Shown piece after piece: positions 21,048-54,000 of a DNA stretch of 64,000 nucleotides. How positions within the stretch are numbered: the first letter of the stretch is position 1; every line of letters begins with the position of its first letter. Under the pieces are notes generated by a model, which saw only the letters and a list, made by a program, of their open reading frames with translations, did not search any database and was not told the DNA's origin. The stretch lies in the IMG/VR virus record IMGVR_UViG_3300013120_000738, positions 62,001-126,000 of that record; one strand, given 5' to 3'. A program made the translations under genes and the position numbers.

Positions 21048-21174
21048 GAGTACTCTCCTACCTTTATGGACGTCACCCAACTTATATACACTATAATCGG
21101 ATGAAGGTTTCGGTTCTAGAATTGAAATACGTTTGGTTTGCCCCTCAGACCGAGGGACGTCTTTTGCGCGGTGG

Positions 21175-21519
21175 TCACCCTTTTCGGAGTGAACAGGCTT
21201 TGATTTTGCGGGCGGTGGGATTACTTTGGGAACCGGAGTCGGTATCTTTTTGTTTGAGGTCTTTTCGTTTGATTTTGTAGTAGGTTTTTGGTCCGATTCG
21301 CGGGAAGGTGGCACGTTGATCGGTTTCGGTCGTTTCGGAAGTGACGTCACCCTTTGATCCACCACCCTCGGTTTCACTTCCATCTCTGCTAGAAATTGAT
21401 AAATCATCGATAGGGGAAGCCTCACTACCTCGCGAAGTCTTTTCAGCACTTCCGATCGTTGGGCTTTCTTCGGATCCACAGAACAGTTGCCTTAATAAAT
21501 TAATTACTTTCTTCATCAT
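21175..21519 (-). CDS. Low-complexity hypothetical protein (frame uncertain)
   Basis: 114-aa ORF overlapping in another frame the long open 5' extension of the actin-like ORF. Confidence 0.4.
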   Translation of the reverse strand: MMKKVINLLRQLFCGSEESPTIGSAEKTSRGSEASPIDDLSISSRDGSETEGGGSKGDVTSETTETDQRATFPRIGPKTYYKIKRKDLKQKDTDSGSQSNPTARKIKACSLRKG

Positions 21520-21790
21520 CGAGATCTACTTTCAATCCAAACCCACCCTTAGCTCTCGGCGGCTTCTTAATGTGTGGAGCTACAATTTCCGGGGGAAGAT
21601 CTCCAACAATCCTCTCCTGGATACTTTTATCTTCATCATGTTGTGCAACACTTAGACCAACATGATTTGAGCTCTTAGACATATTTTCAAAAGCAATAAC
21701 AAGTCTTCGGAACAAACAAAGAAATATTATGCTATAAATACCTATCCCTAGCCCCACACACGCATATACAAACCATATTAACCATATCAT
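21500..21790 (-). CDS. Small membrane protein
   Basis: Hydrophobic N-terminal 27 aa; ATGA coupling. Confidence 0.7.
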   Translation of the reverse strand: MIWLIWFVYACVGLGIGIYSIIFLCLFRRLVIAFENMSKSSNHVGLSVAQHDEDKSIQERIVGDLPPEIVAPHIKKPPRAKGGFGLKVDLDDEESN

Positions 21791-40701: not shown

Positions 40702-42069
40702 TTAGCCAGGAACCATATTATGTATCAGGCATTGTCCCCTGATGTTATCCCTGTGTAAGCCAATTTGTCGAGTAGTAGTTCCTAAGAATTGAGCAATATG
40801 TGTTTTCTTAGGTTTTTTGTCACCGAACATCTCAGAGAATGCAGTATAATGCGGTCCGGTCTGAGAGTCGATGTCAAAAACTACTTGGCAATCGCCATCT
40901 GGTAAAGCACAGCGTATTGCCGTCATCACGTCACTCGATTCAACGCATTGTACATGGTCTTCTTGGTCCATATTAACTCCCTCCATCGTCCGGTAATGAA
41001 CCTGCTGTATGGTGAATACGTTGTCGTCCCCATCCTGGACACCCTCTTCCTGCATAAGCACATGCTCCGCTAGTGAAATTGTGGATTCCAACAATGGAGC
41101 ACTTGCATCCCGTAATACACAAATCCGGTCGTCGTGAGCCTCAATAGTAATTCCAGCATCTAACGCGCGTTGCTGCAATAAGAGGTATTCGACGGTAAAT
41201 TCTGGAGGTGTCAAATTACCCTGGAGATAAACGACGTATTGTCGGTCGTCGTTAAAATAATCATCAACAGAATGGTCAAGCCGCATCTTTTTGCAAAGCA
41301 TGATGAGTTCTTTATACATGATCTCATCAGCAGGTGCGGTGATCTTGACTTTCTTTTTGTTGTGTTCTTTGCGTTGATTCTCAGCGAGCTGTTGGCGGAA
41401 ATAATTCCACACATATTCACCAAAGAATCTTACCATTTGTTGGACACTATCGAGGATCTTCCAGGGATTGTCATGGGCGAAATCACCTGGAATGTAGTCG
41501 ATTGGAGATGAGCAGGTTGGTATATTCTGTTCGACCCACCCGTATTCACCCTGAGGCTTGAAAGGCACTTGGTTGTCACAAATGTCCTTATATTGGGCCT
41601 TGGTGATGTACGTTCCTGGAACGAGTTCCGTGTCTCCAGGAGTCTCTACCCGCATCTGCTTGCAATTGGGGCAACTCTCGTATTGCCTATCAATTGGCTT
41701 GGGCAGTCCACGCTCAGTCATCCAATGACTGGAACCACATGCACGACAGTGGAAGTCGTACTTTTTGTGGTATATGATGCCCACAACTCCTCTCCAGATG
41801 GCAATCGCGTATTCATTGTCAGCGATTAGCCGGTCGTCTCTGTAGTCGGCACCAATTGTAGCAGCAAGCTCTCTAGCGAACGCGTGTCGCTTTGCTTGCA
41901 TTTCGGGGTGATTAATGATCTGTTCAGTAATTTCCCCAGCTTTGCGACGTTCCGCGTCGCTAAGACTCGCCATAGTGACATTGGCGATGCTGCCTCGAAT
42001 CAGCAATTCGGGCAATTGTCGTAGTAAAGGCATGGCACATCCTTTGAGAAAAAACCGTTGCACAAACAA
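40702..42069 (-). CDS. Divergent sigma70-like factor with zinc-ribbon insertion
   Basis: Region-2-like helices (..AIWRGV / FFGEYVWNYFRQ) split by CRAC...CPNC; C-terminal LP....VF...HIAQFLGTTTRQIGLHRDNIR region-4-like HTH. Confidence 0.55.
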   Translation of the reverse strand: MFVQRFFLKGCAMPLLRQLPELLIRGSIANVTMASLSDAERRKAGEITEQIINHPEMQAKRHAFARELAATIGADYRDDRLIADNEYAIAIWRGVVGIIYHKKYDFHCRACGSSHWMTERGLPKPIDRQYESCPNCKQMRVETPGDTELVPGTYITKAQYKDICDNQVPFKPQGEYGWVEQNIPTCSSPIDYIPGDFAHDNPWKILDSVQQMVRFFGEYVWNYFRQQLAENQRKEHNKKKVKITAPADEIMYKELIMLCKKMRLDHSVDDYFNDDRQYVVYLQGNLTPPEFTVEYLLLQQRALDAGITIEAHDDRICVLRDASAPLLESTISLAEHVLMQEEGVQDGDDNVFTIQQVHYRTMEGVNMDQEDHVQCVESSDVMTAIRCALPDGDCQVVFDIDSQTGPHYTAFSEMFGDKKPKKTHIAQFLGTTTRQIGLHRDNIRGQCLIHNMVPG

Positions 42070-42159
42070 GATAGGCTAATCGCGCTTTATCGGGGTACCA
42101 CTGTATTGTGGCGCACGAGAAGCCAACGTTAAATCGCTCCATCGGGAGGTCAAAAAACA

Positions 42160-42912
42160 ATGTACTGTGACAGTGACGAACTCGAGAGAAACTGGTTCCA
42201 TTGGATACTTGGAACAGCGTCTCCTGACCTAGAGCTCTATCGAAAAAATGGGTTATTGTGGACGAAAATAATCGGAGTTGCAAAACACAGCGGCGAAACA
42301 ATCCTGAAGAGGGGTAAGCCTTTACCAGACCCTTCATATCCTGAAAGATTGCATTGCCTAGCATTTGCTGATCCGATCTACTTTAAAACCGATGATGGTG
42401 ATCCCCAAGACGTCGATTGGGACGCGATCTTGGAAATTCTCGTTTCACAAGCATTTAGTCTAGAATCTGACTCTAGATTACACCTTCTGGACAATCCATT
42501 CGAGCAACTTCTTAATGTGATCCCACATCTAGAAGAAGAGGGATATATTAGGGAACAACCAACCGAAAGTTCGTGGCATGCTATGCTACGAGACGTTCGG
42601 AATATTTGTGATGGTATTTCGACAAGGTTTAATCTGCCGAATGAAGATGAGCAACAAGAATTGGCTAGCAAAGCCTTTGTCCAGGTCTTAGAGAAATTAG
42701 TATCTGGTCGCTTAATATATATGCCCGGTAGAGCACCTGTATTTAATCTCCTGACCACTACCACATATAGGGTAATGTACAGCATCCTAAATAAGCAAAC
42801 GCACCAGCGGCAAGGGATACGCCAGCTTTTGGATGACGCGGCGGCTGGGGTTCTACCCAGTAATGCAGGACGGTCCATCCGTGTCCCACAACTTCCCAAG
42901 AGAGCTATTTAA
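42160..42912 (+). CDS. T4 gp55-like late sigma factor candidate
   Basis: ICDGISTRFN...EQQEL...AF...L......Y..GRAPVFNLLTT...R.MYSILNK resembles gp55 region 2; no region-4 HTH. Confidence 0.55.
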   Translation: MYCDSDELERNWFHWILGTASPDLELYRKNGLLWTKIIGVAKHSGETILKRGKPLPDPSYPERLHCLAFADPIYFKTDDGDPQDVDWDAILEILVSQAFSLESDSRLHLLDNPFEQLLNVIPHLEEEGYIREQPTESSWHAMLRDVRNICDGISTRFNLPNEDEQQELASKAFVQVLEKLVSGRLIYMPGRAPVFNLLTTTTYRVMYSILNKQTHQRQGIRQLLDDAAAGVLPSNAGRSIRVPQLPKRAI

Positions 42913-43022
42913 TAGAGTACCACCCTGAGTACTCCTTCGTATCGTTCCTTATTAGAACACAAAAAGCCTCTTCTGTCAATATATCAAATACGTATCCGAA
43001 AGATGAAACTATTATATACATA

Positions 43023-43319
43023 TTGCTAGCATGTATTGGAAAAAAGGGTATTCCTCCTTTACAGGGTGGTCATATGAAAACTAAACCATACAACACCGAC
43101 ATTCCGCCAGAGTTAAAACAACTTATTGCTGACCACCAAGAAGCAATAGTAATACTTGTCGACAAGAGTGACAAAGAAGACTATGATACAAAAGTGTCAG
43201 CATTCGTGAAAATGTTAGATAAAGATAGCAAACTTGCCAACTTACTTGCTGACATATTAGAGAATCTACATGCACAGGAACGTCGTTGCATCCAGAGTGA
43301 AACCGTTGGTAGTCCGTAA
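43023..43319 (+). CDS. Hypothetical protein (start probably 43074)
   Basis: Helical ORF coupled to the downstream gene. Confidence 0.6.
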   Translation: MLACIGKKGIPPLQGGHMKTKPYNTDIPPELKQLIADHQEAIVILVDKSDKEDYDTKVSAFVKMLDKDSKLANLLADILENLHAQERRCIQSETVGSP

Positions 43320-44217
43320 ACGGTCTGCGATTAACGTTCCCAAGACTGTCAAAATAGTTGCAAAGCCAAAAGCCGAAAAAGTACTAGATTTAAAAGACAT
43401 TCGGCGAATAGAACCACGCAAGGCAGTACGCACACCTCCCGCCGCTTCCGTCGCCCAATCCAAAATTCTAAGGCGACATCGCAATATCAGGCGCAAGACC
43501 CAAGTCCGATACGAGACAAGAGAGCCATCCTATGGGTCGATCGAAAAAATAAAAGCCCTACAAGGAATAGGTTGTGGGAATATACTAATAATATTAGGGA
43601 ATGGCCCATCATTATTAGAAGTATCAGATATCGACCTTAAGAATATTAAAGAACACGATAAGATCCATACCCTAACAGTCAATAAACCAGACGAGCGAAT
43701 TTGGCCGACAACATATTGGGCATTCTTCGATTATTCACAACTAAGACGCCATGAGGACTTATGGAATTCCTATCATGGCACTATGTTTAATTCTACAGCT
43801 ATACGAAAACAAAAACAATCTTCTATGCAATTTAAGAATCATAGAGGGCAAGGCTGGAGTAAAGACCCAAGCAAAGGGATTTATATCGGACGATCATCAG
43901 TTTATGCTTCAATGCAGATAGCAGCATGGATGAATTATGATCATATTTATATATTAGGCTGCGATATGAATCCTAGCGGAATAGATGGTAAATTACATTT
44001 TTATGGCGTCAATCCAGATGTCGAACCAGAATTACGGGCTAAAAGATTTGCAAAAGAAGCAGAATGGTATGATACAGCAGCAGTAGTATTAAGCCCAGAA
44101 GAAAGAACTAGATTTACTTTTGTGACCGACTACAATCCTTGGGACTTTGTTAAGAAATTCGGGAATATAACGCATAGAGACTTAACACCCATAATAGAAC
44201 ACGCTAATCGACTCTGA
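43270..44217 (+). CDS. Maf/DUF115 (MptE-like) domain protein, putative CMP-sugar transferase
   Basis: IILGNGPSL, SS.YA.MQ.A.WM.Y..IYILGCDM, HFYG. Confidence 0.75.
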   Translation: MHRNVVASRVKPLVVRKRSAINVPKTVKIVAKPKAEKVLDLKDIRRIEPRKAVRTPPAASVAQSKILRRHRNIRRKTQVRYETREPSYGSIEKIKALQGIGCGNILIILGNGPSLLEVSDIDLKNIKEHDKIHTLTVNKPDERIWPTTYWAFFDYSQLRRHEDLWNSYHGTMFNSTAIRKQKQSSMQFKNHRGQGWSKDPSKGIYIGRSSVYASMQIAAWMNYDHIYILGCDMNPSGIDGKLHFYGVNPDVEPELRAKRFAKEAEWYDTAAVVLSPEERTRFTFVTDYNPWDFVKKFGNITHRDLTPIIEHANRL

Positions 44218-44231
44218 CGTATTATGGAGGC

Positions 44232-44765
44232 ATGAGTAAGCCTCTAAAATCTCTAAAGAAAAGAAGCCAATTACCAGAGCTACTTAACGAACTAGGTTTA
44301 ACGGGTTTTGGTATCGAGCTAGGCGTCGCTGCCGGTCTTTTTTCATCTCTGATTTTAAAGAAAAGTCAACTACAATTATTATTCTCCGTGGATCTCTGGG
44401 GTACTCGTTGCCACGATGATGAGCAATATAAAGCAGTAGTTGATAAATTATCTGAATTTGGTCAAAGAAACGCAATCTTAAGATTAAGCTTTAGCGAAGC
44501 TGCTCGTCTTTTCCGAAATGATCTGTTTGATTTTATCTATGTTGACGGGAATGCCAGAAAAGGCCAGGAAGGCGGAAAGACGCTTCACGAATGGTGGCCC
44601 AAATTAAAAAGTGGCGGGATCTTCGCTGGTCACGATTATGATAAAGAACACTGGCCATATAATGTTGAAATGATAGATGCCTTCGTAGAAGAGCATCATT
44701 TAACACCAGAAGACAGATTTTCCTCATGGTATTGCCAAAAAGGACTTGATCGGAGAATAATATGA
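44232..44765 (+). CDS. Class I SAM methyltransferase (Methyltransf_24-like)
   Basis: GIELGV..G.FS, VDLW, FDFIYVDG, WWPKLK.GGI.AGHDY. Confidence 0.88.
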   Translation: MSKPLKSLKKRSQLPELLNELGLTGFGIELGVAAGLFSSLILKKSQLQLLFSVDLWGTRCHDDEQYKAVVDKLSEFGQRNAILRLSFSEAARLFRNDLFDFIYVDGNARKGQEGGKTLHEWWPKLKSGGIFAGHDYDKEHWPYNVEMIDAFVEEHHLTPEDRFSSWYCQKGLDRRII

Positions 44766-45148
44766 ATAAGGTTTATATTGCGACGAGATTACATAATGCG
44801 GCTAGAGCACAAGAAATAAAGGAGAAACTCTACGCATTAGGTATTGAGATCACTTACGACTGGACCAAGCATGGACAAGTATATAGTGAGGAGGAATTAA
44901 GAGCCTTCGGTGAAGAGGAAGAAAACGGAGTAAGGACGTGTGATGTCCTTCTGATGATATTTCCAGGTGGATGCGGTAGTCATTGGGAAGCAGGCTTAGC
45001 CAGAGGTCTTAATATACCTATCGTACTTCTAATGGAGAAAGAAGTAGAACAAAAAACCTTTTATTATCTTGATGGTGTGCATCAAACAAAAACAGAAGAT
45101 GAAGCCATCAAGAAAGTGCTCACATTGTTAGGGAGATCCGATGTTTAA
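44762..45148 (+). CDS. Nucleoside 2-deoxyribosyltransferase / dNMP N-glycosidase family protein
   Basis: KVYIA, YDWT, V..CDVL, GGCGSHWEAGLA (catalytic Glu). Confidence 0.8.
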   Translation: MNKVYIATRLHNAARAQEIKEKLYALGIEITYDWTKHGQVYSEEELRAFGEEEENGVRTCDVLLMIFPGGCGSHWEAGLARGLNIPIVLLMEKEVEQKTFYYLDGVHQTKTEDEAIKKVLTLLGRSDV

Positions 45149-45839
45149 CAAATTAGAACTTGATGTAATGCAAGCCAATGAATTAATCGAAGCAGCTAAT
45201 CTAGCAGCTAAGTATAAATTCCCAGCGATTGTGGTTCACCCAGCTATTACGTCAGAAGCTATGATGGCACGTGGTAGAGCTGGCGGGCAATATAAAATTA
45301 TTACACCAGTAGACTGCCCAAAAGGTGAAGTCTTCGGCATGACAAAATTTAGGGGCCTATCAACAGATGCCTTAGATGCTGATGGTTTTGAAATTATGTT
45401 GACTGCCGGGAAAACAGTCACAGATACAAGAAATGAAGCCAAATCTCTAACTGACTTTATCAAACAACATCTCACAGAACTAACAGAAGTAAGATTTGTG
45501 TTTGGTGTTTTCTCGAGAACCGAAGAAGATATAGCCACATTATGTGAAGCTTTGTTGGACGTCCGGATGCCAGCGATGATCAGGACTGACCATCAACTTA
45601 AATTACAAATAAGCAAAGCCAACGCAGATACACACAATCAAGTAATAGATAAAATCCTCGAGAAAGTAAAGGTTCCTATCAAATTATCAGCAAATATCAA
45701 TAGTGTGCGTACAATCACTTCTTGCGATAGAGCATCTAGGTTTGCTGTTAATGTATTACAAGCAAAGGCAATAATTAAGGAATTCCAGAACCAACCACAA
45801 GAGTTAAGAGGAATGCTCGAAAGTGGATCTCCTCAGTAA
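45141..45839 (+). CDS. DeoC (deoxyribose-phosphate aldolase)-like TIM barrel, probably catalytically altered
   Basis: A.KY.F.AIVV.P, KI.T.V..P.G....K, ADG.E, IKLS, A.R follow the DeoC pattern; Schiff-base KTS appears as RTD. Confidence 0.6.
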   Translation: MFNKLELDVMQANELIEAANLAAKYKFPAIVVHPAITSEAMMARGRAGGQYKIITPVDCPKGEVFGMTKFRGLSTDALDADGFEIMLTAGKTVTDTRNEAKSLTDFIKQHLTELTEVRFVFGVFSRTEEDIATLCEALLDVRMPAMIRTDHQLKLQISKANADTHNQVIDKILEKVKVPIKLSANINSVRTITSCDRASRFAVNVLQAKAIIKEFQNQPQELRGMLESGSPQ

Positions 45840-46179
45840 TGTAACATGTCCTGATTGTGGTTTAAAGCATAGTTATACCTATTCTGATACTTATTGTGAA
45901 CCTAATAGAGTATATGTTGATTGTATATATTGTGGAACCAAAATTCAAGTAGCAGCGTCAGAAGAAGTAACAGAAAGAAAACCAATAGAAGAAGAGATCC
46001 CTGTATTAGAAACAGGGACGGTTGTACGAGTAACAAACGAACAACACGTTTGGCATAACCAAATAGGCATAATAAAAGACAAGAAACACAAACACTACAG
46101 AATAGAGATATTTGGGGCACTTCTGTGGGTTCCATCTGATTGGGTAGAAGAACATGAGCTTAATGATGCTAATCCATGA
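45823..46179 (+). CDS. Zinc-ribbon + KOW/SH3-like protein
   Basis: CPDC...CIYC; GTVVRV......QIGII. Confidence 0.65.
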   Translation: MDLLSNVTCPDCGLKHSYTYSDTYCEPNRVYVDCIYCGTKIQVAASEEVTERKPIEEEIPVLETGTVVRVTNEQHVWHNQIGIIKDKKHKHYRIEIFGALLWVPSDWVEEHELNDANP

Positions 46180-46534
46180 GCTTGGCGATGATGCCGACCT
46201 CTTAGTAAGGCAAGACTCTTGGCTGGAGCAACAACGGAGAGAAACAGCCACCAAATTAGATAGACTGACAAGTGAATTGCGGTCTATAATATTAGCACAA
46301 CGTATCAAAAGCACACTACAACAAAGAAATATGGTCGCCGTCTTAGATGACGAACGCGATCAACAGGGTGAAATAGCATGTCTAAGTGTCCTCATCAAGA
46401 ATCTCCCAGATGCCCTAAAAGACTTTGACAGATCAAGACATGACCCCAATAAAAGACTTAGTGCCGGTGCCCAAATAGCAGGGTGGAAAGCTGATGGACA
46501 CGACGTAGAAGCATCAAGAGCACTAAGAGATTAA
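46154..46534 (+). CDS. Hypothetical protein
   Basis: 126-aa ORF within the operon. Confidence 0.65.
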   Translation: MSLMMLIHELGDDADLLVRQDSWLEQQRRETATKLDRLTSELRSIILAQRIKSTLQQRNMVAVLDDERDQQGEIACLSVLIKNLPDALKDFDRSRHDPNKRLSAGAQIAGWKADGHDVEASRALRD

Positions 46535-47328
46535 CACATACAATCCCTACATAATTCTATATCACATCTCTGTGATTGAAGGTGCTTCTGGCGTATCTCA
46601 TTATATCGTGTATTATACCAGATGTCATATATTGGTGTAACATGTGTATTCCCCACAACTTCCTTACCTTCAATATCAGCATGGCATAACGCAACATCAC
46701 CATTTACTAATATTGTCATATTAGTCCATAAACGAGAACATACATCTGTAGATAATTTCCCCCTTGTTGCTATAGATATATCAGCCCAATTATGAAACTT
46801 TGCAAATTTGACACCAGGAAATAATTTCACAGTCCTTCTTTGATCATCAGTATTACAACATCGTATCCTCACATTGACTGGTGATCCTAATTTTCTATTT
46901 AATGCAATAAAATTATAAATATTATCAAATACTCGACCATACTCTAACGGATATCTAATCCTCTCAAATTCCTCTATACTAGACCCATCAACGCTAAAAG
47001 TTATCTGCTCTAATCCAGCCTCAATCAAAGCTTGTGCATATTCATTATTAAGTAATGATGCATTGGTAAAAAGTCTAGGTTTGATACCACACTTTGCCAC
47101 ATATATTACCTTCTCTATTAATGTATCATCTAAAAGAGGTTCCCCAAAATTATGAAGATGTATAGCCCTGCATTTTCGCCTGCACTGATCAACTAGAGTA
47201 ATAAAGAATTGATAATCCATGTATTGTACTTTACGTTGCATCTTCCTATGAGCACACATTATACATTGTGCATTACAAGCATTTGTCACCTCGATTCGAA
47301 CTGTTGGTGGGAAATTTGGTAATTTCAT
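46531..47328 (-). CDS. Radical SAM/SPASM-domain protein
   Basis: CNAQCIMC, GEPLL, TNASLL, SVDG, C..LW....I..NG.V.LC..D......GN, C..C. Confidence 0.93.
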   Translation of the reverse strand: MKLPNFPPTVRIEVTNACNAQCIMCAHRKMQRKVQYMDYQFFITLVDQCRRKCRAIHLHNFGEPLLDDTLIEKVIYVAKCGIKPRLFTNASLLNNEYAQALIEAGLEQITFSVDGSSIEEFERIRYPLEYGRVFDNIYNFIALNRKLGSPVNVRIRCCNTDDQRRTVKLFPGVKFAKFHNWADISIATRGKLSTDVCSRLWTNMTILVNGDVALCHADIEGKEVVGNTHVTPIYDIWYNTRYNEIRQKHLQSQRCDIELCRDCMC

Positions 47329-47412
47329 GATGTGTTACTAGTTATATCTTGACTACCATAGCTATTTCCGTATTTAATCAATAACATCCCACCTTACATA
47401 AAGGCAAAAACA

Positions 47413-48579
47413 ATGCAATCTGGAACGTTCAATGTAGTTACCGATGGACAATGGGGCTCCTGTGGAAAAGGTTTGATATCAACAGCAATCGCCGACAGAT
47501 ATCGACCAAGCGTCATATCAACGACCAATATGGCAAATGCGGGGCATACCGCAGTCGATAGTGATGGAGCCACATTCATAGCTAAGGCCCTACCAGCCCC
47601 AGCAATTCTTGGAAAATGGCGAACTGATTATCTTCCATATATCGTAATAGGACCAACAGCCGCATTTCATGCCAAGCAAATGGCAAAGGAAGTCGCCGAA
47701 ACCGAATGTGCTCCAAGGCTCGTGATACATCCAAGAGCGGGCATAATCACAGAGCAACACCAAGAAATCGAGAATCAACTCAAAGGTGGGACAAAACACG
47801 TCGCTAGTACCATGCAAGGTTGTGGGGCATTCCTTGCCGACAAGATTATGAGGCGGCCAGATTTGAAGCTTGCAGGCGATACAGAATTCACCCAATACTC
47901 AGGGTATACTCTCGAAAAAGCACTCGCGGCATGTTTACGTGGTACAAAATGGCAAAGCCTCTGCGTAGACTTATCGATACCACGCATATTACAAATGTTC
48001 ATGGAGGTGGGCAATACTATCCTACATGAAGGATCTCAAGGATTCAGCCTGGATATTAACCACGGCTCACATTATCCTCAGTGCACCAGCAGAAGCACGA
48101 CGGCTATGCAAAACATGGCCGACATGGGTATTACTCATCATCACATGGGTAGAGTAATATTGGTCATCAGGCCAGCGCCTATTCGCGTCGGTAATGTAGT
48201 TGAAGGTGGTAAAACTGTAGGATATTCTGGCGATTGTTATCCTGACCATACAGAAACAACTTGGGAAGCTATTGGTGAGGCTTGTGGAGCACCACAAGAA
48301 ACGTTTAAAGGTGAATTAACTACAGTCACAAAAAGATTACGACGGGTTTTCACGTTCTCCGATATCCAATTTAAGGAAGCTGTTGCGATTAATGGAGCGA
48401 CCGAGATTGCTCTTAATTTCGCAAACTATATTGATTGGAAGTGTTATGGAACTAATAACCCAAACAATCTTCCTCCCAAAGTCACCGATTTCATAAAGAA
48501 ATTAGAAGATCTAGGTGGCGTCAAAGTCACTATAGTTGGCACTGGTCCAAGAAACGACCATGTTTGTTTCTTAGACTAA
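47413..48579 (+). CDS. purZ: PurZ, N6-succinyl-2-amino-dAMP synthetase (adenylosuccinate synthetase-like, 2-aminoadenine pathway)
   Basis: DGQWGSCGKGL (Ser at the PurA Asp13 position), NMANAGHT, EGSQGFSL, YPQCTSR, R..PIRVG, SGDCYPD, ELTTVTKR.RRVFTFS..Q, LNFANY (replaces PurA TKLD). Confidence 0.9.
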   Translation: MQSGTFNVVTDGQWGSCGKGLISTAIADRYRPSVISTTNMANAGHTAVDSDGATFIAKALPAPAILGKWRTDYLPYIVIGPTAAFHAKQMAKEVAETECAPRLVIHPRAGIITEQHQEIENQLKGGTKHVASTMQGCGAFLADKIMRRPDLKLAGDTEFTQYSGYTLEKALAACLRGTKWQSLCVDLSIPRILQMFMEVGNTILHEGSQGFSLDINHGSHYPQCTSRSTTAMQNMADMGITHHHMGRVILVIRPAPIRVGNVVEGGKTVGYSGDCYPDHTETTWEAIGEACGAPQETFKGELTTVTKRLRRVFTFSDIQFKEAVAINGATEIALNFANYIDWKCYGTNNPNNLPPKVTDFIKKLEDLGGVKVTIVGTGPRNDHVCFLD

Positions 48580-49065
48580 TTGCGATCAAATCTACATCAT
48601 TTCCACACGTACCTATTTTGGATGGGAATGATGAATCGCAAAAAGAATGATGCTAACTATAGAAATAATCTCCGGAAAGCAGCTAAGGCTGCCGGAATGT
48701 CTTTTAAAGCATATAGAGCTTCTAGGTGGGAATCAGTAGGATGGACATATGCTGTGGAGACAGTAAGAAAAAGATGTAAAAGACGCGGTATTGAGTGTAC
48801 TATAACACCAGCTATAGTAAAAAACTTATGGGATAAACAAAATGGAATTTGTCCGATAACAGGCTGGAAAATGGAATTGCGTAAAAGTGGGATTGGATTA
48901 GTTCCAACCACAGTTACAATCGATAGAATAGATCAAAGTGTTGGTTACACACAAAATAATATTCGTCTTATTTGTTTCACTGCTAATAATGCAAGGCACA
49001 CGGGATCAGACGAAGATTTGCTTAAATTCTGTAAGGCAGTAGTCAATCATGCTCGAAGCGTTTAA
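48580..49065 (+). CDS. Free-standing HNH-superfamily homing endonuclease-like protein
   Basis: LW.KQNGICPITG..M...TIDRID...GY...NI.LIC..AN; same family as 2474-3025. Confidence 0.8.
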   Translation: MRSNLHHFHTYLFWMGMMNRKKNDANYRNNLRKAAKAAGMSFKAYRASRWESVGWTYAVETVRKRCKRRGIECTITPAIVKNLWDKQNGICPITGWKMELRKSGIGLVPTTVTIDRIDQSVGYTQNNIRLICFTANNARHTGSDEDLLKFCKAVVNHARSV

Positions 49066-49894
49066 AGTCGCTGCATATCTAGACGAAGCCGGGGAAGACC
49101 CGGCTACGGCCTGCAAAGTCCTGAAGGAATTGAATATCCATTATGCAGTCTTGCGTAGAGCATGGGTCAATAATATTCTAGAACTAAGCGACCGTGGATG
49201 CAAGAAGTTAAGAGATATATTAGAAGAATATGAAGTAACACCTATAGCATTAATAACTACATTGGGAGAAGTCCCAGCTCCAAGTCTTGTGTCCTTAGAC
49301 CAAGAATATATTCAAAGAGCATTCAATTTAGCGTCATATTTCAAGACGCCGATTGTAAGAATCCAGATAGGTACTAAGGTCAAATCAGATGTTACTGCCG
49401 AAGTTGATTGGTGGATGGAGTATATTAAGCAACAATCAATTGCACATAATATATCACCGGTATTCGAGATAACTCCAGATTCTATCTATATAAGGCCTAC
49501 AGATATAGCCGCACTACTTGCCAAGCATAGGAAATGGCAATTATTATATGATCCCGTACAACTTATACTAAAACAAAAACAAGACCCATTTGTCCGCTTT
49601 TGGTCCTTACTGAAGAATAGAACTGCTGCTATAGATGTGCGGGATCATAAGATAGGTAGAGGATTTAAACCTGTTGGCTTTGGTGATTCTAATATATTGT
49701 TAACACTAGTCGACGTGATAAATACACAATACAAGGGATGGTTATTTCTAGAACCAAATCTTGGGAGGCGACACGGATCACACAACACCAAAGAAGATGT
49801 CTTCAAAATGAGTGTTGAAGCCATTAAATTTGGATTACAATCAAAGTTAGGGGTGAATGATGATAAACCTAAACGAAGCGATCCAAAGGATTAA
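49049..49894 (+). CDS. Sugar-phosphate isomerase/epimerase (xylose isomerase-like TIM barrel), partly degenerate
   Basis: DEA..D, LR, IVRI, FE, YDP, IDVRD (His lost), G.GD, Y.GW..LEP. Confidence 0.7.
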   Translation: MLEAFKVAAYLDEAGEDPATACKVLKELNIHYAVLRRAWVNNILELSDRGCKKLRDILEEYEVTPIALITTLGEVPAPSLVSLDQEYIQRAFNLASYFKTPIVRIQIGTKVKSDVTAEVDWWMEYIKQQSIAHNISPVFEITPDSIYIRPTDIAALLAKHRKWQLLYDPVQLILKQKQDPFVRFWSLLKNRTAAIDVRDHKIGRGFKPVGFGDSNILLTLVDVINTQYKGWLFLEPNLGRRHGSHNTKEDVFKMSVEAIKFGLQSKLGVNDDKPKRSDPKD

Positions 49895-50069
49895 GAAGGC
49901 AGGTAGCACAAACGTTCGTGCAGTACCAATGCCAGGTAAAAATGTAAATGAAGATCATCAAATTGAGATAAAAGAAGGGAACACGTGGCTTCCGATAGTA
50001 GACGGAATACCCAGAAGCGCTGCGATGGATATCATTAACCAAGCCACAAATAGAACAATTCTGGGTTGA
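49857..50069 (+). CDS. Small hypothetical protein
   Basis: 70-aa ORF within the operon. Confidence 0.65.
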   Translation: MMINLNEAIQRIKKAGSTNVRAVPMPGKNVNEDHQIEIKEGNTWLPIVDGIPRSAAMDIINQATNRTILG

Positions 50070-50500
50070 TGAACAAGAAGATTACTTCAGTATTAGAATT
50101 ATCAAGATACAAAGTCGGTCACAAGGCCTGGTGGGTTGTGCTGCGCTACTCATCACCAATCCCACAATTAAATAGTGATGAAGAATGGATGCTTCATACA
50201 CACCCAAAAACAATCTATTCAGGCCCATATAAAAATACTTGGCAATCTAAAGCTAAGCTACCTAGACTACATCATTCAGACTTCAATATTGTTGTTTCAC
50301 TATTATCCTCTGAACTAGTAGTAGAACCATTCGTGATTAATAGAATCACCAGAAGCAATCAGACTGGTGAATTTTATTATGCTAATGCGGATGACGAATG
50401 GATGCCAGAATCTTGCCTTTGCGACTCTCAAGCAGCCGCCGTAAAGGAAAGAAGCAGAATACTAAGATTAATGAATAAATGGCTTGCCGAAGCTAAATAG
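50066..50500 (+). CDS. Hypothetical protein
   Basis: 144-aa ORF, coupled to the upstream gene. Confidence 0.7.
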   Translation: MMNKKITSVLELSRYKVGHKAWWVVLRYSSPIPQLNSDEEWMLHTHPKTIYSGPYKNTWQSKAKLPRLHHSDFNIVVSLLSSELVVEPFVINRITRSNQTGEFYYANADDEWMPESCLCDSQAAAVKERSRILRLMNKWLAEAK

Positions 50501-50576
50501 ATTATCTGCTCTGGTAATTAAGATATACATGGTCGCGGAAATCGATCGTGAAACCATCAATAATTAGGATATATCC

Positions 50577-51020
50577 ATGGCCAAGAGAAAGAAAGAAAAA
50601 CACCCTACGTTCTTTTGCTTAGAAGGTGCTATACGGTGCTATGAAGAAGGCACGATGCTCGAGCTACAATCACAAATTACCCCAGAAGAATGGGAACATA
50701 TAATAGTTGAAACAATAAAGTATAAAGCATTCCTAGACTGCTTAAAAGAAATAGCATGTCCAATATTAGAAGAAACCTGGGGTAAAGAGGACGAATACTT
50801 TATCTTCCAACTAGATGTAGCAATATCTAGAATGAGAAATATTGATGCTCTTCTAGTAGCAAAACATAATGCCGAAAAAATCAAGAAATCATACTCTAAA
50901 TGGATGAAAGAGAATGCAGTTGAAGCTAAGAAAGCGATAGAGGAGATACGACAGGCCCACCGCAAAGCCTTGGGCCAGTACTTCGAAGGTGATGATACAA
51001 TGGAGGTGTCGGATTTATAG
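50577..51020 (+). CDS. Hypothetical protein
   Basis: 147-aa ORF with AGGA SD. Confidence 0.7.
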   Translation: MAKRKKEKHPTFFCLEGAIRCYEEGTMLELQSQITPEEWEHIIVETIKYKAFLDCLKEIACPILEETWGKEDEYFIFQLDVAISRMRNIDALLVAKHNAEKIKKSYSKWMKENAVEAKKAIEEIRQAHRKALGQYFEGDDTMEVSDL

Positions 51021-51061
51021 TACTCAAATCTACGATAGATTCCTACGATATAGAGAATGCC

Positions 51062-54000
51062 ATGTCTACAGATGCCTTCGATGACGTAAAAAGACCTATT
51101 AAAGGTCAAATGCGCGAGATCTCACAAGCTACCCACGTAGAAGTAATTTCTGCTCAACAAGAAATTATAACCCCAGCATTTGGATTACCATCGCCAAATG
51201 TCGAAGTAGCTATGCGCGGTTTAGCGTATGGGAAAACTCAAAGAGTCACATCACCTCAAGAAGTAGGCTCAATCACCCCAATTCCACCTCCTTCAGGCTC
51301 ATTAAGTTCAAGTGTTGTAACAGCATCTGCTTATGGCCTAACCGGAGATGGGGCGACAGCGTTCAAAAAGACTGCAGCCGGTTTACGTTATGCTAAAGAG
51401 AGTTCGAAATTACGAACGGCATTAACCAATACTGCGTTTGGTGTTGTTAAACAAGACATATTCTATTCAGGATCTCCAGATCCGTGTTCGGAAGATCCTG
51501 CAGATAACTGTAAAGTAGATCTAGCAGTTGTCTTGGATGATACTGGTAGTATGGGTGGTACTATCAACGGTGTCAAAAGTGGTATCCAAGGAGTTGCTGA
51601 TTTAGTCGAATTAGCTGTTGGTCAGAATTACCGTTTTAGTTTAACAACATTCAAAGACAGCGTCACAACTAGATTACCTTTTAGCAATCTATGCGGATCA
51701 GCATCGCTAACTGCATTTAAAAGTGCCGTTAACGGAGTAGGTGCTAGTGGTGGTGGTGACGGTCCAGAATGGTCAGCAGCAGCCGTAAAACATGCGGCAG
51801 AAGGTAGAGCTGGAAGCTGGCGGGAAGGTAATATTGTACGAGTACTAATAGTACTAACTGATAATATAAATAATTATGGGGTTGGATCAAGTGTAGATTC
51901 CGGAGTATCAGTCAATGCGGCGGCTTCAGCATGTGCGGCTATGAATATCAGAGTCATTTTTGCTGGTACACCTATGTGGGGTACTATGCTAAATGAAGCC
52001 GATACCTATATCAGCATGACCGGCGGGGTTATGATCCAGACTGCTAGGGATGGTCTGGGCGTTGATACTCTATTAACAAGTTACATCTTCGCCCTCTGTG
52101 GTGCTGGTGAGCCGCTTTCCCCAGAATGTGAAGGCGGTATCGATAAGATAGTAAACGGTAAATTCGATACTGGTATAGAAGGGTGGATAGACAAGACGAC
52201 TCTATCGGGGCGATCAATAGCCTGGTATGATACCGATGAACGTAAAGCACTTGAATTGGACGGTGCTGCCGGACAAACAGCGACAGGTATGGAAGGTGGA
52301 GACCTAGTCGTACTTGGATTAGATGTCTTAACCGAGGTTGTTCCACCTACCTCTTCTGCGGCCACAGATCTCCGATCACAGGCGGCGCTTGAACTCCCAG
52401 AAGGATATTCTATAATAGAACATGCACTATGGGATACAGGTGCATTATTACCAGGCCCTAATAATACTGGTGCCACACTTGGTTGGGTAGGTCTTGGTGC
52501 TCATGTCGTAGATCATCCGCCACTCGAGAAAAGATTACAATTGACAGGGTATAATGATGGGTTTTCTACTAGTACTTTCGATGACAAATACGTAGCAGCT
52601 ACGGCCGATGGGGATATTAATATATATGACACGGATGGGACATACGAATCTACACTACTAGCAACGTCTGATCATATAATCAACGTAGAAATTGATATGG
52701 TTCGCGGCCATGTCTTCTACCTTATAAATGGCCAAGAAATTTACAGAATGAATTATGATGGTACTGGGTCACCAATACTTATCGCGTCTCATGTCCCAAT
52801 AGGTGGACAAATATATGCATTCGATATTGACCCAATCAATAATGTTCTAGTACACAGTTCAGTCCGTGGCACTACCTATGAGATATTAATCAACAATTTA
52901 GATAATCACGTCAATCCAGGAACACCAACTGGGTACCGCGTAGCCAGGACAACAACCGATGAGGTAACACATATAAAAATAGATACCAATTCCGGACATA
53001 TTTATTGGATAGAAGAAGGCGTCGGAACAGCGTCATTAAAGAGAGCCTCTTACGACGGAGATGTACAAAATATTGTAACTGATTTATGGGGTGGGTCAGG
53101 GACCGGCAGTGAAAGAGTTTCTGGCATAGATATAGGATTCGATCCAGCCAATCCTATAGAGACTACTATTTATTTGAGTTTGATAAATGTTTCAACCGCA
53201 TCAATCGCTAAAGTAAGAATTGAAACACTTGCTGATAATACAATATCATCAGTCACATATACTGAGACCTTTATTGATTGTGGGGGTGCTCCTCCGCAAG
53301 ATGTCCTATTCGACCCGATTGCTGGTAGAATTGTAGCACCACAAGGCCCAATAGAAGATGCGGGCCAAGTAGCACAATATCTATTAGGCGGTAGAAGTAC
53401 ATCACCAACATATTTCCAGCCATCACCAACCAAAACACCAAGAAGTGTTAAAAGAATCATCACAAACGGGGCGGCGATAGCCCAAACATTTGCGGTCGCT
53501 ACTGATGATCTTTTCGCATTTTCAGCCAATATCGATACAGTAACAGACGGTTCAGTTATTATCCAACTAGTAGATGGTGACACAGTACTAAATGAAGCAT
53601 ATTATAATCCAGGTGCCACATCATTTGCCGCCGTCCCAGATATTCCCGCAGTTGTTATTAACGGAGAAACAGAAAATACATTTACCAGATTTCGCCCGCA
53701 AGTCCTTGGTGGGACTGTACTAGATCGCAGTGAATACCCTGTTGTTGTGAAATGTGGGCATGGAGGAGTGCCATATTTTGGTAGTGGTGTGCTAATAACA
53801 GATAGGCATGTTTTAACTGCAGCTCATGTTACTTATCGCGCTAGTGGTACTGCATTAGCCGACAATGAACAAATAGTACAAGTCTATACTGGGGGTTCAC
53901 CGCCAGAAGTGAATATGCTCTCCAGAAAGATTTATAGACATCCTGACTGGAATCCAGCCGCACTTTCTGATCCTAGTCTATTAGGTCTAGACACCACAAA

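What the first reader, a model, noticed from the sequence alone, without database searches (positions are those of the whole stretch)
44762..45839. NDT-family N-glycosidase + DeoC-like pair near purZ: possible alternative to DatZ for removing dA nucleotides
Seen: two overlapping genes about 1.6 kb upstream of purZ on the same strand. Established: NDT/DNPH1-type enzymes cleave dNMP to base + deoxyribose-5-phosphate or swap bases, and deoxyribose-5-phosphate is the DeoC substrate. Z-phages must suppress dATP. Inference: a dAMP glycosidase or A-to-Z base exchange route could replace DatZ. Caveats seen: the DeoC-like protein has Arg at the apparent Schiff-base Lys (MIRTD vs FVKTS), so it may only bind ligand, and an opposite-strand radical SAM gene separates the operon from purZ.
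Basis: inference. Interest (0 to 1): 0.62.

Follow-up and report, generated by a model that had tools for sequence, protein, structure and literature searches.

The report
NDT glycosidase plus DERA-fold partner beside purZ
In an uncultured jumbo phage that carries the diaminopurine gene purZ but no DatZ or MazZ, two overlapping genes encode an NDT-family enzyme, probably a deoxynucleotide N-glycosidase, and a previously undescribed aldolase-fold protein; the first half of this idea was shown biochemically in 2026 for a different NDT clade (DmtZ), while the aldolase-fold partner appears to be new.

Summary
ORF 44762-45148 is an NDT-superfamily protein: Pfam PF05014 scores above its cut-off, the model has pLDDT 95, and Tyr5/Glu53/Glu76 are intact. 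It overlaps by 8 nt ORF 45141-45839, whose model is a DERA barrel (Z 22, rmsd 2.4 Å over 204 residues), with Arg148 where DERA has its Schiff-base Lys. PurZ (Ser at the PurA Asp13 site) starts 1.57 kb downstream.

The NDT/DERA-fold pair is a conserved, mostly overlapping unit. An NDT-superfamily gene lies directly upstream of the DERA-fold gene in 30 of 32 loci, using two different NDT subfamilies. A Ser-type PurZ is found at 29 of the 31 places long enough to judge, in four different gene arrangements.

No DatZ or MazZ-type gene was found in the 227-kb record. Four 98-100% complete relatives have no DatZ-type and no MazG-family gene above cut-off (one has a marginal generic HD match), and each carries two dUTPase-family genes.

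This protein is not a detectable DmtZ orthologue. Its sequence features favour a 2'-deoxynucleoside 5'-monophosphate substrate; dAMP is inferred from context only.

The DERA-fold family (210 clusters, no Pfam model) was not found in the papers searched. Its chemistry is unresolved.

The parts
44762..45148 (+). NDT-superfamily protein (128 aa), predicted 2'-deoxynucleoside 5'-monophosphate N-glycosidase and/or dR5P transferase; catalytic positions Tyr5, Glu53, Glu76
   Evidence: PF05014 at 33.4 bits, above the 28.8-bit cut-off. AF2 pLDDT 94.9. Foldseek matches NDT, BcmB, DNPH1, MilB and BlsM about equally. The family profile's best PDB matches are the CMP N-glycosidases BlsM (1.4e-7), BcmB and MilB. 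Invariant residues are listed.
45141..45839 (+). DERA-fold TIM-barrel protein (232 aa) of an unnamed family; Arg118/Arg148/Lys181 at the positions of E. coli DERA Lys137/Lys167/Lys201
   Evidence: Fold evidence. There are 210 representative clusters and none merge with DeoC. It overlaps the NDT gene by 8 nt.
47413..48579 (+). PurZ-type succino-amino-deoxyadenylate synthase (388 aa), with Ser at the PurA Asp13 site (motif GQWGSCGKG)
   Evidence: phrog_1211 at 3.8e-59. Best PDB matches are S-2L PurZ (2e-39) and phiVC8 PurZ (4.5e-37), against E. coli PurA at about 1e-17. The best NCBIfam model is PurZ NF038379 at 223 bits, below its 300-bit cut-off.
43270..44217 (+). MptE-like/DUF115-like protein (315 aa) with a basic N-terminal tail; recurs near the NDT/DERA-fold pair in distant phages
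   Evidence: PF01973 at 2.9e-4, below cut-off. Present in 23 of 24 related loci. It is 38% identical (E 3e-71) to a gene 2.3 kb upstream of the pair in L035. MptE-like genes are also present in L028 and L034.
44232..44765 (+). Methyltransf_24-type methyltransferase (177 aa); overlaps the NDT start (ATGA); lineage-specific
   Evidence: PF13578 at 4.4e-10. No homologue at this position in any of the 24 related loci.
45823..46179 (+). Zn-ribbon protein (118 aa), conserved downstream of the pair in the jumbo-phage relatives; function unknown
   Evidence: Only weak Zn-ribbon Pfam hits. tblastn finds it in most related loci.
46154..46534 (+). Conserved 126-aa protein between the pair and purZ; function unknown
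   Evidence: No family match. Conserved in related loci at 33-57% identity.
46531..47328 (-). Radical SAM/SPASM protein (265 aa); an insertion specific to this genome
   Evidence: PF04055 at 3.5e-13 and PF13186 at 2.3e-12. Absent from all 24 related loci.
48580..49065 (+). HNH/endonuclease VII-like homing endonuclease (161 aa) inserted after purZ
   Evidence: phrog_3322 at 5.9e-24. Not found at this position in relatives.
49049..49894 (+). Xylose-isomerase-like (AP_endonuc_2) TIM-barrel protein (281 aa), always directly after purZ in the jumbo relatives
   Evidence: PF01261 at 1.5e-4, below cut-off, in the window. The L001 homologue scores 37.8 bits, above the 31.1-bit cut-off. Conserved in 22 of 24 related loci (absent from the two that end early, L002 and L013).

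Best explanation
The two genes form a translationally coupled module for disposing of an unwanted deoxynucleotide, in a PurZ-carrying jumbo phage that lacks DatZ and MazZ. Step 1 (inferred): a divergent dUTPase-family paralogue elsewhere in the genome converts dATP, and possibly dGTP, to the monophosphate, as DutZ does. Step 2 (inferred from family residues and context): the NDT-like enzyme uses Glu76 as nucleophile, positioned by Tyr5 and assisted by Glu53, to cleave the N-glycosidic bond of a 2'-deoxynucleoside 5'-monophosphate. In this context that is most likely dAMP, giving adenine and deoxyribose 5-phosphate (dR5P), possibly with transfer of dR5P to another purine as DmtZ does. Step 3 (weakest): the DERA-derived barrel binds or converts the dR5P product, which pulls the reaction and removes a reactive sugar phosphate. 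Classical beta6-lysine Schiff-base aldol cleavage is unlikely in this protein because Arg148 replaces that lysine. A lysine relocated to beta7 (Lys181) or a different reaction remains possible. Together with PurZ this would give adenine exclusion without DatZ.
For: NDT superfamily membership comes from the Pfam HMM above cut-off, the fold, and the aligned catalytic Glu. Tyr5, Glu53, Gly72, His74 and Glu76 are invariant in 26 homologues. Tyr at the MilB Phe17 position goes with 2'-deoxy substrates, since MilB F17Y switches specificity from CMP to dCMP (PMC4081090). The residue six before the nucleophile is Gly or Arg; from my own recollection of the NDT literature, nucleoside NDTs have a 5'-OH-binding Asp there, while MilB has phosphate-binding Ser97, and invariant Gly72 matches MilB Gly99. 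DmtZ provides the precedent: an NDT-family dAMP hydrolase/dR5P transferase working with DutZ in PurZ0 phages that lack DatZ and MazZ (PMC12884076). The pair is a conserved unit. An NDT-superfamily gene lies directly upstream of the DERA-fold gene in 30 of 32 loci. The two genes overlap by 4-35 nt in five of the six loci checked. Two different NDT subfamilies fill that slot. A Ser-type PurZ lies on the same contig in the window, 23 jumbo-family loci, L029-L032 and L035/L044, in four gene arrangements. In other members a Dcd/dUTPase gene directly follows the DERA-fold gene. No DatZ, HD or MazG gene is in the own record, which has one divergent dUTPase-like gene. Four complete relatives have no DatZ-type or MazG-family gene above cut-off and carry two dUTPase-family genes each. 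DERA fold: Z 22, collinear. The beta7 Lys and a Gly-Asn loop after it are conserved in 123, 121 and 112 of 132 representatives.
Against: No assay exists for this clade, and base specificity cannot be read from sequence. DmtZ's essential Asp12 aligns with a variable position here (His11), and DmtZ Pro57 is Ile30. The family profile's nearest solved relatives are CMP N-glycosidases, not purine enzymes. The DERA-fold protein has Arg at the Schiff-base position in 127 of 132 representatives, and four representatives have no Lys at beta6 or beta7. Much of the PurZ co-occurrence comes from one syntenic phage family and is not independent. One contig with the DERA-fold gene and Dcd shows neither NDT nor PurZ across about 25 kb. 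The dUTPase paralogue lies 36 kb away and its specificity is unknown. That the phage DNA contains diaminopurine has not been shown.
Confidence: 0.5

Rival explanations
1. The same two-step module acts on another nucleotide. The NDT-like enzyme would clear a pyrimidine or damaged dNMP (dCMP, dUMP, hmdUMP or similar), like DNPH1 or the MilB/BlsM family. Its nearness to purZ would then reflect a general nucleotide-metabolism neighbourhood rather than a role in adenine exclusion.
For: The best solved relatives by profile are the CMP N-glycosidases BlsM, BcmB and MilB. In distant members the neighbours are pyrimidine enzymes: Dcd/dUTPase, ThyA and DHFR. One contig has the DERA-fold gene and Dcd but no PurZ across about 25 kb.
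Against: A Ser-type PurZ is found at 29 of 31 informative places, in four different gene arrangements. The lineage has no other candidate for dA-nucleotide removal. DmtZ shows that NDT enzymes are recruited for exactly this role.
Confidence: 0.2
2. The NDT-like protein is a nucleoside-level purine 2'-deoxyribosyltransferase, like NDT-M2 of the 2025 metaGPA preprint, exchanging adenine for another base on deoxynucleosides. The DERA-fold protein would be functionally unrelated.
For: NDT-M2, from dZ-enriched aquatic contigs, transfers from dA 3.4-fold better than from dZ (10.1101/2025.10.22.683976). Chroococcidiopsis NDT is among the top fold and profile hits.
Against: There is no Asp six residues before the nucleophile, where (from my recollection of the NDT literature) nucleoside NDTs hold the 5'-OH; here it is Gly or Arg. 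The profile is closer to the NMP glycosidases. The tight, overlapping pairing with a DERA-fold protein makes most sense if a sugar 5-phosphate is released. The preprint's NDTs co-occur with DatZ and DNA polymerase A, both absent here.
Confidence: 0.1
3. The DERA-fold protein is a real retro-aldolase for dR5P whose nucleophilic lysine has moved from beta6 to beta7 (Lys181), with Arg148 taking over the electrostatic role of DERA Lys201.
For: 122 of 132 representatives are Arg118/Arg148/Lys181. The five with Lys148 all lack Lys181 (Ile/Val/Thr) and all have Asp84, the DERA Asp102 equivalent. That pattern suggests one pocket lysine is kept. The Gly-Asn loop after beta7 is conserved. The Lys148-type members sit in the same NDT-paired, PurZ-linked position.
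Against: Four representatives have no Lys at either position. I know of no precedent for such a swap in DERA. The residue mapping rests on a collinear structural alignment, not on superposed coordinates I could inspect.
Confidence: 0.25
4. The module belongs to a different DNA or glycan modification route. One option is base exchange with a 7-deazaguanine precursor. Another is CMP turnover linked to the ulosonic-acid glycosylation genes of these phages.
For: A QueC-like gene lies at 7689-8279. An MptE/DUF115-like gene recurs next to the pair. CMP-sugar cytidylyltransferase and glycosyltransferase genes are in the window and in relatives. The nearest solved relatives act on CMP.
Against: The QueC-like gene is present in only 2 of 5 genomes that carry the pair, and no TGT/DpdA was found in any. 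Tyr5 argues for deoxyribose rather than ribose substrates. The distant contexts are dNTP-pool genes, not sugar genes.
Confidence: 0.07

Closest known systems
DmtZ (Gordonia phage Ghobes gp53; N-terminal domain of the Arthrobacter phage Wayne DmtZ-DutZ fusion), Poubanne et al., NAR 2026, PMC12884076
   Same: Both are NDT-superfamily proteins in PurZ-type phages that lack DatZ and MazZ and carry a dUTPase-family gene. Tyr and Glu nucleophile are at equivalent positions (Tyr5/Glu76 here, Tyr6/Glu103 in DmtZ). Both have a W-T-x-H-G motif, and both have a non-acidic residue where nucleoside NDTs bind the 5'-OH.
   Different: There is no significant sequence relationship (BLASTP E 0.074; hhalign E 0.016, probability 2.9%). 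DmtZ Asp12, Pro57 and Asn77 correspond to a variable His11, Ile30 and invariant Glu53 here. This protein is 128 aa against 161. It is never fused to or adjacent to Dut. It is paired with a DERA-fold protein that DmtZ phages are not reported to have. The host phage is a roughly 350-400 kb jumbo phage with a DnaE-type polymerase, not a roughly 45-kb actinophage with DpoZ.
NMP/dNMP N-glycosidases of the NDT superfamily: BlsM, BcmB, MilB (CMP/hmCMP) and DNPH1/Rcl (dNMP)
   Same: These are the best profile matches in the PDB (BlsM 1.4e-7, BcmB 2e-6, MilB 8e-6). They share the G-(S/T)-H-x-E-x-G motif around the nucleophile and the phosphate-contacting Gly four residues before it. The fold matches.
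   Different: This family has Tyr rather than Phe at the MilB Phe17 position, pointing to deoxy rather than ribo substrates. It has Glu53 rather than Asp at the third catalytic position. It has no Ser at the MilB Ser97 position and is shorter.
2-Deoxyribose-5-phosphate aldolase (DERA/DeoC, EC 4.1.2.4)
   Same: It has the same eight-stranded barrel, collinear over its whole length (Z 22, rmsd 2.4 Å over 204 residues). An acidic residue on beta4 (Glu84), a Lys on beta7 (Lys181) and the Gly-rich loop after beta7 are kept. Its presumed ligand, dR5P, is the product of its gene neighbour.
   Different: There is no detectable sequence similarity to PF01791 or to any solved DERA. The Schiff-base Lys (E. 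coli Lys167, B. halodurans Lys155; PMC8403123) is Arg in 127 of 132 representatives. The beta5 Lys is also Arg. The family is a closed set of about 210 clusters; all contexts examined were phage-like, but two nearest ESM Atlas clusters are labelled bacterial.
NDT-M2 and related NDTs from dZ-enriched aquatic viromes (Yang et al., bioRxiv 2025, 10.1101/2025.10.22.683976)
   Same: It is a PF05014 protein statistically associated with dZ-modified aquatic phage contigs and proposed to deplete dA.
   Different: Those enzymes act on nucleosides, co-occur with DatZ and DNA polymerase A, and are not near PurZ. Here the gene is in the purZ neighbourhood, in a genome with no DatZ or PolA found. Their sequences were available only as an image, so no direct comparison was made.

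Membership tests
NDT superfamily (Pfam PF05014) | Match to the family HMM above the curated cut-off | tested here: met
   33.4 bits against a 28.8-bit cut-off, E 5.3e-8.
NDT superfamily (Pfam PF05014) | Flavodoxin-like NDT fold | tested here: met
   AF2 pLDDT 94.9. Foldseek probability 1.00 to NDT, BcmB, DNPH1, MilB and BlsM, TM 0.64-0.74.
NDT superfamily (Pfam PF05014) | Catalytic Glu nucleophile with an N-terminal Tyr/Phe and a third acidic or amide residue | tested here: met
   Glu76 aligns with the nucleophile of MilB, BcmB and BlsM. Tyr5, Glu53 and Glu76 are invariant in 26 homologues. The third residue is Glu rather than Asp or Asn, placed by motif spacing.
DmtZ (dAMP hydrolase / dR5P transferase) | Membership of the monophyletic DmtZ clade (detectable sequence relationship) | tested here: not met
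   BLASTP E 0.074; hhalign E 0.016, probability 2.9%. No tblastn hit in 50,697 phage records, which include the DmtZ phages.
DmtZ (dAMP hydrolase / dR5P transferase) | Asp12, essential and proposed to read the adenine 6-amino group | tested here: not met
   The equivalent position, six residues after the Tyr, is variable (H/K/L/D/R/Q/F/G). The neighbouring Asn12 is invariant.
DmtZ (dAMP hydrolase / dR5P transferase) | dAMP-specific hydrolysis and transfer of dR5P to the Z base | not testable with these tools
   This needs an enzyme assay.
DmtZ (dAMP hydrolase / dR5P transferase) | Partner dUTPase-family dATP/dGTP pyrophosphatase (DutZ), adjacent or fused | tested here: inconclusive
   A divergent dUTPase-like gene exists but lies 36 kb away. 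It is 34% identical to Ghobes DutZ over 112 aa. Relatives carry two Dut paralogues. Its specificity is unknown.
Nucleoside 2'-deoxyribosyltransferase proper (types I and II) | Asp six residues before the nucleophile that binds the 5'-OH of the nucleoside (from my own recollection of the NDT literature) | tested here: not met
   That position is Gly70 in the window and Arg in most homologues.
DERA / DeoC class I aldolase (PF01791) | DERA (beta/alpha)8 barrel | tested here: met
   Z 22.0, rmsd 2.4 Å, 204 residues aligned, collinear. The top 48 entries are all DERA or DERA-derived. The ESM Atlas structure search also gives DeoC clusters.
DERA / DeoC class I aldolase (PF01791) | Match to the family HMM or to solved DERA sequences | tested here: not met
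   No Pfam, NCBIfam or PDB sequence or profile hit. hhalign against E. coli DeoC is not significant.
DERA / DeoC class I aldolase (PF01791) | Schiff-base Lys on beta6 (E. coli Lys167, B. halodurans Lys155) | tested here: not met
   Arg148 is invariant in the 35 close homologues and is Arg in 127 of 132 representatives. The position is assigned from strand order and the collinear alignment.
DERA / DeoC class I aldolase (PF01791) | Auxiliary Lys on beta7 (Lys201) and acid on beta4 (Asp102) | tested here: met
   Lys181 in 123 of 132 representatives. Position 84 is Glu in 89 and Asp in 42 of 132.
PurZ (succino-amino-deoxyadenylate synthase) | Ser in place of the PurA catalytic Asp13 | tested here: met
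   GQWGSCGKG aligns with S-2L CQYGSTGKG and phiVC8 LQFGSTGKG. The rule is stated.
PurZ (succino-amino-deoxyadenylate synthase) | Closer to PurZ than to PurA by sequence; curated model cut-off | tested here: inconclusive
   The best PDB, PHROG and NCBIfam hits are all PurZ. However, NF038379 scores 223 bits, below its 300-bit cut-off. Identity to any cultured phage's PurZ is at most 37.5%.
DatZ / MazZ (canonical dATP-removal and dGMP-supply genes) | Presence of a YfbR-like/HD_3 dATPase or a MazG/DUF550 pyrophosphatase | tested here: not met
   None is in the 227-kb record, which is 63% complete. There is no YfbR-like match in five relatives, four of them 98-100% complete. There is one marginal HD hit and no MazG hit above cut-off.

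The most novel reading that the evidence does not exclude
The DERA-derived protein is a new enzyme that works with the NDT-like glycosidase on the deoxyribose-5-phosphate unit. It could be an aldolase whose nucleophilic lysine has moved to the neighbouring strand, or a catalyst of a reaction not known for this fold. Together with a diverged dUTPase and a divergent PurZ, it would form a third, independently assembled adenine-exclusion system. That system would let 350-400 kb jumbo phages that replicate with a DnaE-type polymerase build diaminopurine genomes.
Probability: 0.2. Interest if true: 0.8.

Novelty: new variant of a known kind. Interest (0 to 1): 0.58.

Why it matters
Z-genome biosynthesis is known from small siphoviruses and podoviruses. 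These use either PurZ with DatZ and MazZ, or PurZ0 with DutZ and DmtZ.

This locus suggests a further solution in uncultured jumbo phages: a different NDT clade, an added DERA-fold component, and a DnaE-type replicase.

If the DERA-fold protein handles dR5P, it fills a gap that the DmtZ work leaves open: the fate of the sugar phosphate released when dAMP is destroyed. It would also define a new, widespread phage protein family of about 210 clusters at 50% identity.

It gives enzymologists a natural DERA scaffold with the catalytic lysine replaced. It also gives a possible marker pair for recognising modified-DNA phages in metagenomes.

Tried and rejected
- **Complex prediction.** NDT-like plus DERA-fold protein gave score 0.00, no verdict. 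This is not evidence for or against binding.
- **Sequence alignment of the DERA-fold family to E. coli DeoC.** Only a non-significant local match in the beta2-beta3 region, and the global alignment failed. Residue mapping therefore rests on strand order and collinear structural alignment.
- **Cultured phages.** tblastn of both proteins against 50,697 phage records found no hit, so there is no cultured representative.
- **Locus search with a diverse 10-sequence alignment.** It failed for lack of a conserved stretch. A 5-sequence alignment worked.
- **Fusion check.** The C-terminal extensions of long DERA-fold members (313-358 aa) are low-complexity tails, not NDT domains.
- **7-deazaguanine route.** A QueC-like gene is present in only 2 of 5 genomes, and no TGT/DpdA in any. 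Rejected as the main explanation.
- **Mom-like link.** The 455-aa minus-strand neighbour (40702-42069) is unrelated to the Mom-like and 453-aa genes of L035 and L034.
- **AP_endonuc_2 gene after purZ.** It has no counterpart after the PurZ of L044.
- **Promoter and terminator scan of 42000-51200.** Promoter-like sites were at the shuffle expectation; terminator-like sites were about twice it (11 against 5.7, sd 2.4), 10 of the 11 on the minus strand and none informative for the operon.
- **Not compared.** The NDT sequences of the 2025 preprint were available only as a figure image.
- **Not used.** The read-mapping and sequencing-run tools.
Full report
**Observation**

The window holds a tightly packed plus-strand gene run:
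- 43270-44217, MptE-like
- 44232-44765, a Methyltransf_24 methyltransferase
- 44762-45148, NDT-like, 128 aa
- 45141-45839, DERA-fold, 232 aa
- 45823-46179, a Zn-ribbon protein
- 46154-46534, a 126-aa protein

The methyltransferase stop overlaps the NDT start (ATGA). The NDT stop overlaps the next start by 8 nt (ATGTTTAA), with GGGAGA just upstream. A minus-strand radical SAM/SPASM gene (46531-47328) follows. After it come purZ (47413-48579), an HNH endonuclease (48580-49065) and an AP_endonuc_2-like barrel (49049-49894).

**The NDT-like protein**

It matches Pfam PF05014 above the curated cut-off (33.4 against 28.8 bits). Its model is confident (pLDDT 94.9). The model resembles NDTs, BcmB, MilB, BlsM and DNPH1/Rcl about equally (TM 0.64-0.74).

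A profile of 26 homologues finds the CMP N-glycosidases first: BlsM 1.4e-7, BcmB 2e-6, MilB 8e-6. Cyanobacterial NDT follows at about 6e-5. In those alignments Glu76 falls on the catalytic glutamate within a shared G-(S/T)-H-x-E-x-G motif.

Tyr5, Leu10, Asn12, Tyr32, Trp34, Glu53, Gly56, Gly72, His74 and Glu76 are invariant. Three residue-level readings follow. They combine what the sequence shows with published structure-function work.
- Tyr5 occupies the position where MilB has Phe17. The F17Y change switches MilB from CMP to dCMP (PMC4081090). A 2'-deoxy substrate is therefore expected.
- Six residues before the nucleophile, MilB has phosphate-binding Ser97. From my own recollection of the NDT literature, nucleoside NDTs have a 5'-OH-binding Asp at that position. 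This family has Gly or Arg there.
- Invariant Gly72 matches MilB Gly99, which also contacts the phosphate.

Together these favour a 2'-deoxynucleoside 5'-monophosphate substrate. The base cannot be read from the sequence.

**The DERA-fold protein**

No Pfam, PHROG, NCBIfam or PDB sequence or profile match exists. The model built from 35 homologues (pLDDT 89.4) is nevertheless clearly a DERA barrel:
- Foldseek gives E 5e-12 and TM 0.75.
- VIA-align gives Z 22.0 and rmsd 2.4 Å over 204 residues, model 1-221 against Bacillus halodurans DERA 5-224.
- The first 48 entries are all DERAs or DERA-derived designs, followed by a drop to Z 15.8.
- The ESM Atlas structure search agrees.

E. coli DERA uses Lys167 on beta6 as the Schiff-base nucleophile, helped by Asp102 and Lys201. 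B. halodurans uses Lys155 (PMC8403123). By strand order and collinearity the equivalents here are Glu84 (beta4), Arg118 (beta5), Arg148 (beta6) and Lys181 (beta7).

An exhaustive profile search found 210 representative clusters, 188 of them at E ≤ 1e-10. The set is closed and does not run into the huge DeoC family. Among 132 full-length representatives:
- 122 are Arg118/Arg148/Lys181.
- Five have Lys148. All five lack Lys181 (Ile/Val/Thr) and have Asp84.
- Four have lysine at neither position.
- Lys69 is invariant in all 132.

The strong conservation argues for an active or ligand-binding protein, not a decaying one. The reciprocal pattern between positions 148 and 181 hints that one pocket lysine is maintained.

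**Genomic context**

The window is bases 62001-126000 of a 227,725-base IMG/VR record estimated at 63% complete. Identical proteins occur on a 340-kb contig. Relatives are 354-408 kb and 98-100% complete, so these are jumbo phages.

Other genes in the window:
- a DnaE-type DNA polymerase III alpha split into two ORFs
- a UDG-superfamily protein
- helicase, SMC and Metallophos genes
- an actin-like Volactin
- glycosylation genes

In 24 related loci the order is conserved: g455(-), g250, MptE-like, a variable gene, NDT-like, DERA-fold, Zn-ribbon, g126, PurZ, AP_endonuc_2-like. The methyltransferase, the radical SAM gene and the HNH gene of the window have no counterparts there, so they are insertions. 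This block is one syntenic backbone, and its co-occurrence counts as roughly one observation.

More informative are the distant members of the DERA-fold family.
- L030-L032 carry a roughly 195-aa PF15891-like NDT, a Lys148-type DERA-fold gene and a PurZ-like gene 0.4-2.3 kb downstream.
- L029 has the order NDT-like, DERA-fold, RNase T, PurZ-like, LAGLIDADG, ThyA, DHFR.
- L035/L044 has PurZ-like, then after about 4.9 kb MptE-like, Mom-like, NDT-like, DERA-fold and Dcd.
- L034/L043 has MptE-like, a 453-aa gene, DERA-fold, Dcd, then ThyA, with neither NDT nor PurZ across about 25 kb.
- L028 ends 3.4 kb downstream of the pair without a PurZ.

Overall, an NDT-superfamily gene lies directly upstream in 30 of 32 loci. 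Two NDT subfamilies fill that slot, and the genes overlap by 4-35 nt in five of the six loci checked. Every PurZ-like protein has Ser at the PurA Asp13 site.

**Is DatZ present elsewhere?**

The own record has no YfbR-like, HD_3, HD, MazG or DUF550 match. It has one divergent dUTPase-family gene 36 kb from the pair.

In five relatives, four of them essentially complete, there is no YfbR-like match, one marginal HD hit and no MazG hit above cut-off. Each carries two dUTPase-family genes, one canonical and one divergent. The own copy corresponds to the divergent one. It is 34% identical to Ghobes DutZ over 112 residues, which does not settle its specificity.

**PurZ**

The closest solved proteins are S-2L PurZ (2e-39) and phiVC8 PurZ (4.5e-37), against about 1e-17 for E. 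coli PurA. The best NCBIfam model is PurZ, but below its cut-off (223 against 300 bits). Identity to any cultured phage's PurZ is at most 37.5%, and the 25 best-matching cultured phages are all 38-67 kb.

**What is already known**

- Yang et al. (bioRxiv 2025) found PF05014 associated with dZ-enriched aquatic contigs. One nucleoside NDT preferred dA as donor.
- Poubanne et al. (NAR 2026) characterised DmtZ, an NDT-family enzyme of PurZ0 actinophages. [quoted passage not shown] It works after DutZ, a dUTPase-like dATP/dGTP pyrophosphatase, and these phages lack DatZ and MazZ.

I located DmtZ as Ghobes gp53, where all six published residues match, and compared it. The relationship is not significant. 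The Tyr, the Glu and a W-T-x-H-G motif line up, but Asp12 and Pro57 are not conserved. In that paper the only aldolase is E. coli DeoC, used as an assay reagent. No paper in the library links PurZ with a deoxyribose-phosphate aldolase or with jumbo phages.

**Interpretation**

The most economical reading is a DmtZ/DutZ-like adenine-exclusion route, assembled independently in jumbo phages. The steps would be: Dut paralogue, then NDT-like dNMP N-glycosidase, then a DERA-derived protein that takes the dR5P.

- Shown: the folds, the conserved residues, the gene coupling, the linkage to PurZ and the absence of DatZ and MazZ.
- Inferred: the 2'-deoxy-5'-phosphate substrate class, from residues.
- Inferred more weakly: dAMP as the substrate, from context and precedent.
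- Least secure: the role of the DERA-fold protein.

The main rival is that the module disposes of a different nucleotide. Support comes from pyrimidine-metabolism neighbours in distant members and the CMP-glycosidase affinities of the profile. It cannot be excluded without an assay.

**Verdict**

The DERA-fold partner, its family-wide Lys-to-Arg change and the jumbo-phage setting were not found in the papers searched. I rate this a new variant of a known kind, of moderate to high interest.

Noticed in passing
window 8263-10968 (-) and 12314-13747 (-), with three small ORFs at 10941-12265 (-) between them: The DnaE-type DNA polymerase III alpha is split into two ORFs exactly at Pfam DNA_pol3_alpha profile position 98/99. 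The PHP domain and the N-terminal part are in the 477-aa ORF; the rest, with the finger and HhH domains, is in the 901-aa ORF. About 1.35 kb holding three ORFs with no family match lies between them. A PurZ phage with a PolIII-type rather than DpoZ or PrimPol replicase is itself unusual.
   Followed up: partly
G000:C1:143506-143829 (-) = L005 1498-2085; relatives G001-G005: Relatives carry two dUTPase-family genes each, one canonical and one divergent with an N-terminal insertion (192-220 aa ORFs). The own record holds the divergent one, next to an RNase H gene. It is a candidate DutZ-like dATP/dGTP pyrophosphatase.
   Followed up: partly
L008 11475-12660 compared with the window's purZ; also L022-L026, L030-L032, L044: There are two PurZ clades, with motifs GQ(W/F/H)GS(C/T)GKG and GGAGSSGKG. 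L008 is otherwise a close relative (DERA-fold protein 64% identical) but carries the second clade at the same position (31% identity). This suggests replacement of purZ in place.
   Followed up: partly
window 43270-44217 (+); L035 4253-5173; L034 3629-4495; L028 6215-7276; L032 8119-9090: An MptE/DUF115-like protein with a basic N-terminal tail recurs close to the NDT/DERA-fold pair even in distant, rearranged phages (38% identity, E 3e-71 to L035). It may belong to the same pathway. There is a weak similarity to the KDO transferase WaaZ.
   Followed up: partly
window 7689-8279 (-): A QueC-like PP-loop protein matches both ends of the QueC profile. It is present in only 2 of 5 related genomes, and no TGT/DpdA was found.
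   Followed up: yes
window 4193-4963 (-): A UDG-superfamily protein (PF03167, 4.3e-26). The 2025 metaGPA preprint also found UDG domains associated with dZ-modified contigs.
   Followed up: no
window 46531-47328 (-), 48580-49065 (+), 44232-44765 (+): Three genes inside the conserved block are absent from all 24 related loci: a radical SAM/SPASM gene, an HNH endonuclease and a Methyltransf_24 methyltransferase. These are recent insertions around purZ. In relatives a different, unannotated 185-210 aa gene occupies the methyltransferase slot.
   Followed up: partly
window 49049-49894 (+): A xylose-isomerase-like (AP_endonuc_2) TIM-barrel gene always directly follows purZ in the jumbo relatives. 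Its function is unknown, and it has no counterpart after the PurZ of L044.
   Followed up: partly
window 51062-60448 (+); 19950-21479 (-); 4923-5624 (-), 14344-15429 (+), 21787-23181 (-): Other jumbo-phage features: a 3128-aa giant protein (its relative in L001 has a VWA domain), an actin-like Volactin homologue, and a CMP-sugar cytidylyltransferase with several GT2 glycosyltransferases. L003 and L004 carry a full KDO-like sugar cluster downstream.
   Followed up: no
L044 14897-16255 (= L035 5187-6545): A Mom-like protein (PF25680) lies between the MptE-like gene and the NDT/DERA-fold pair, in a distant phage that also has PurZ. This hints at further adenine or purine modification in that lineage.
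   Followed up: no
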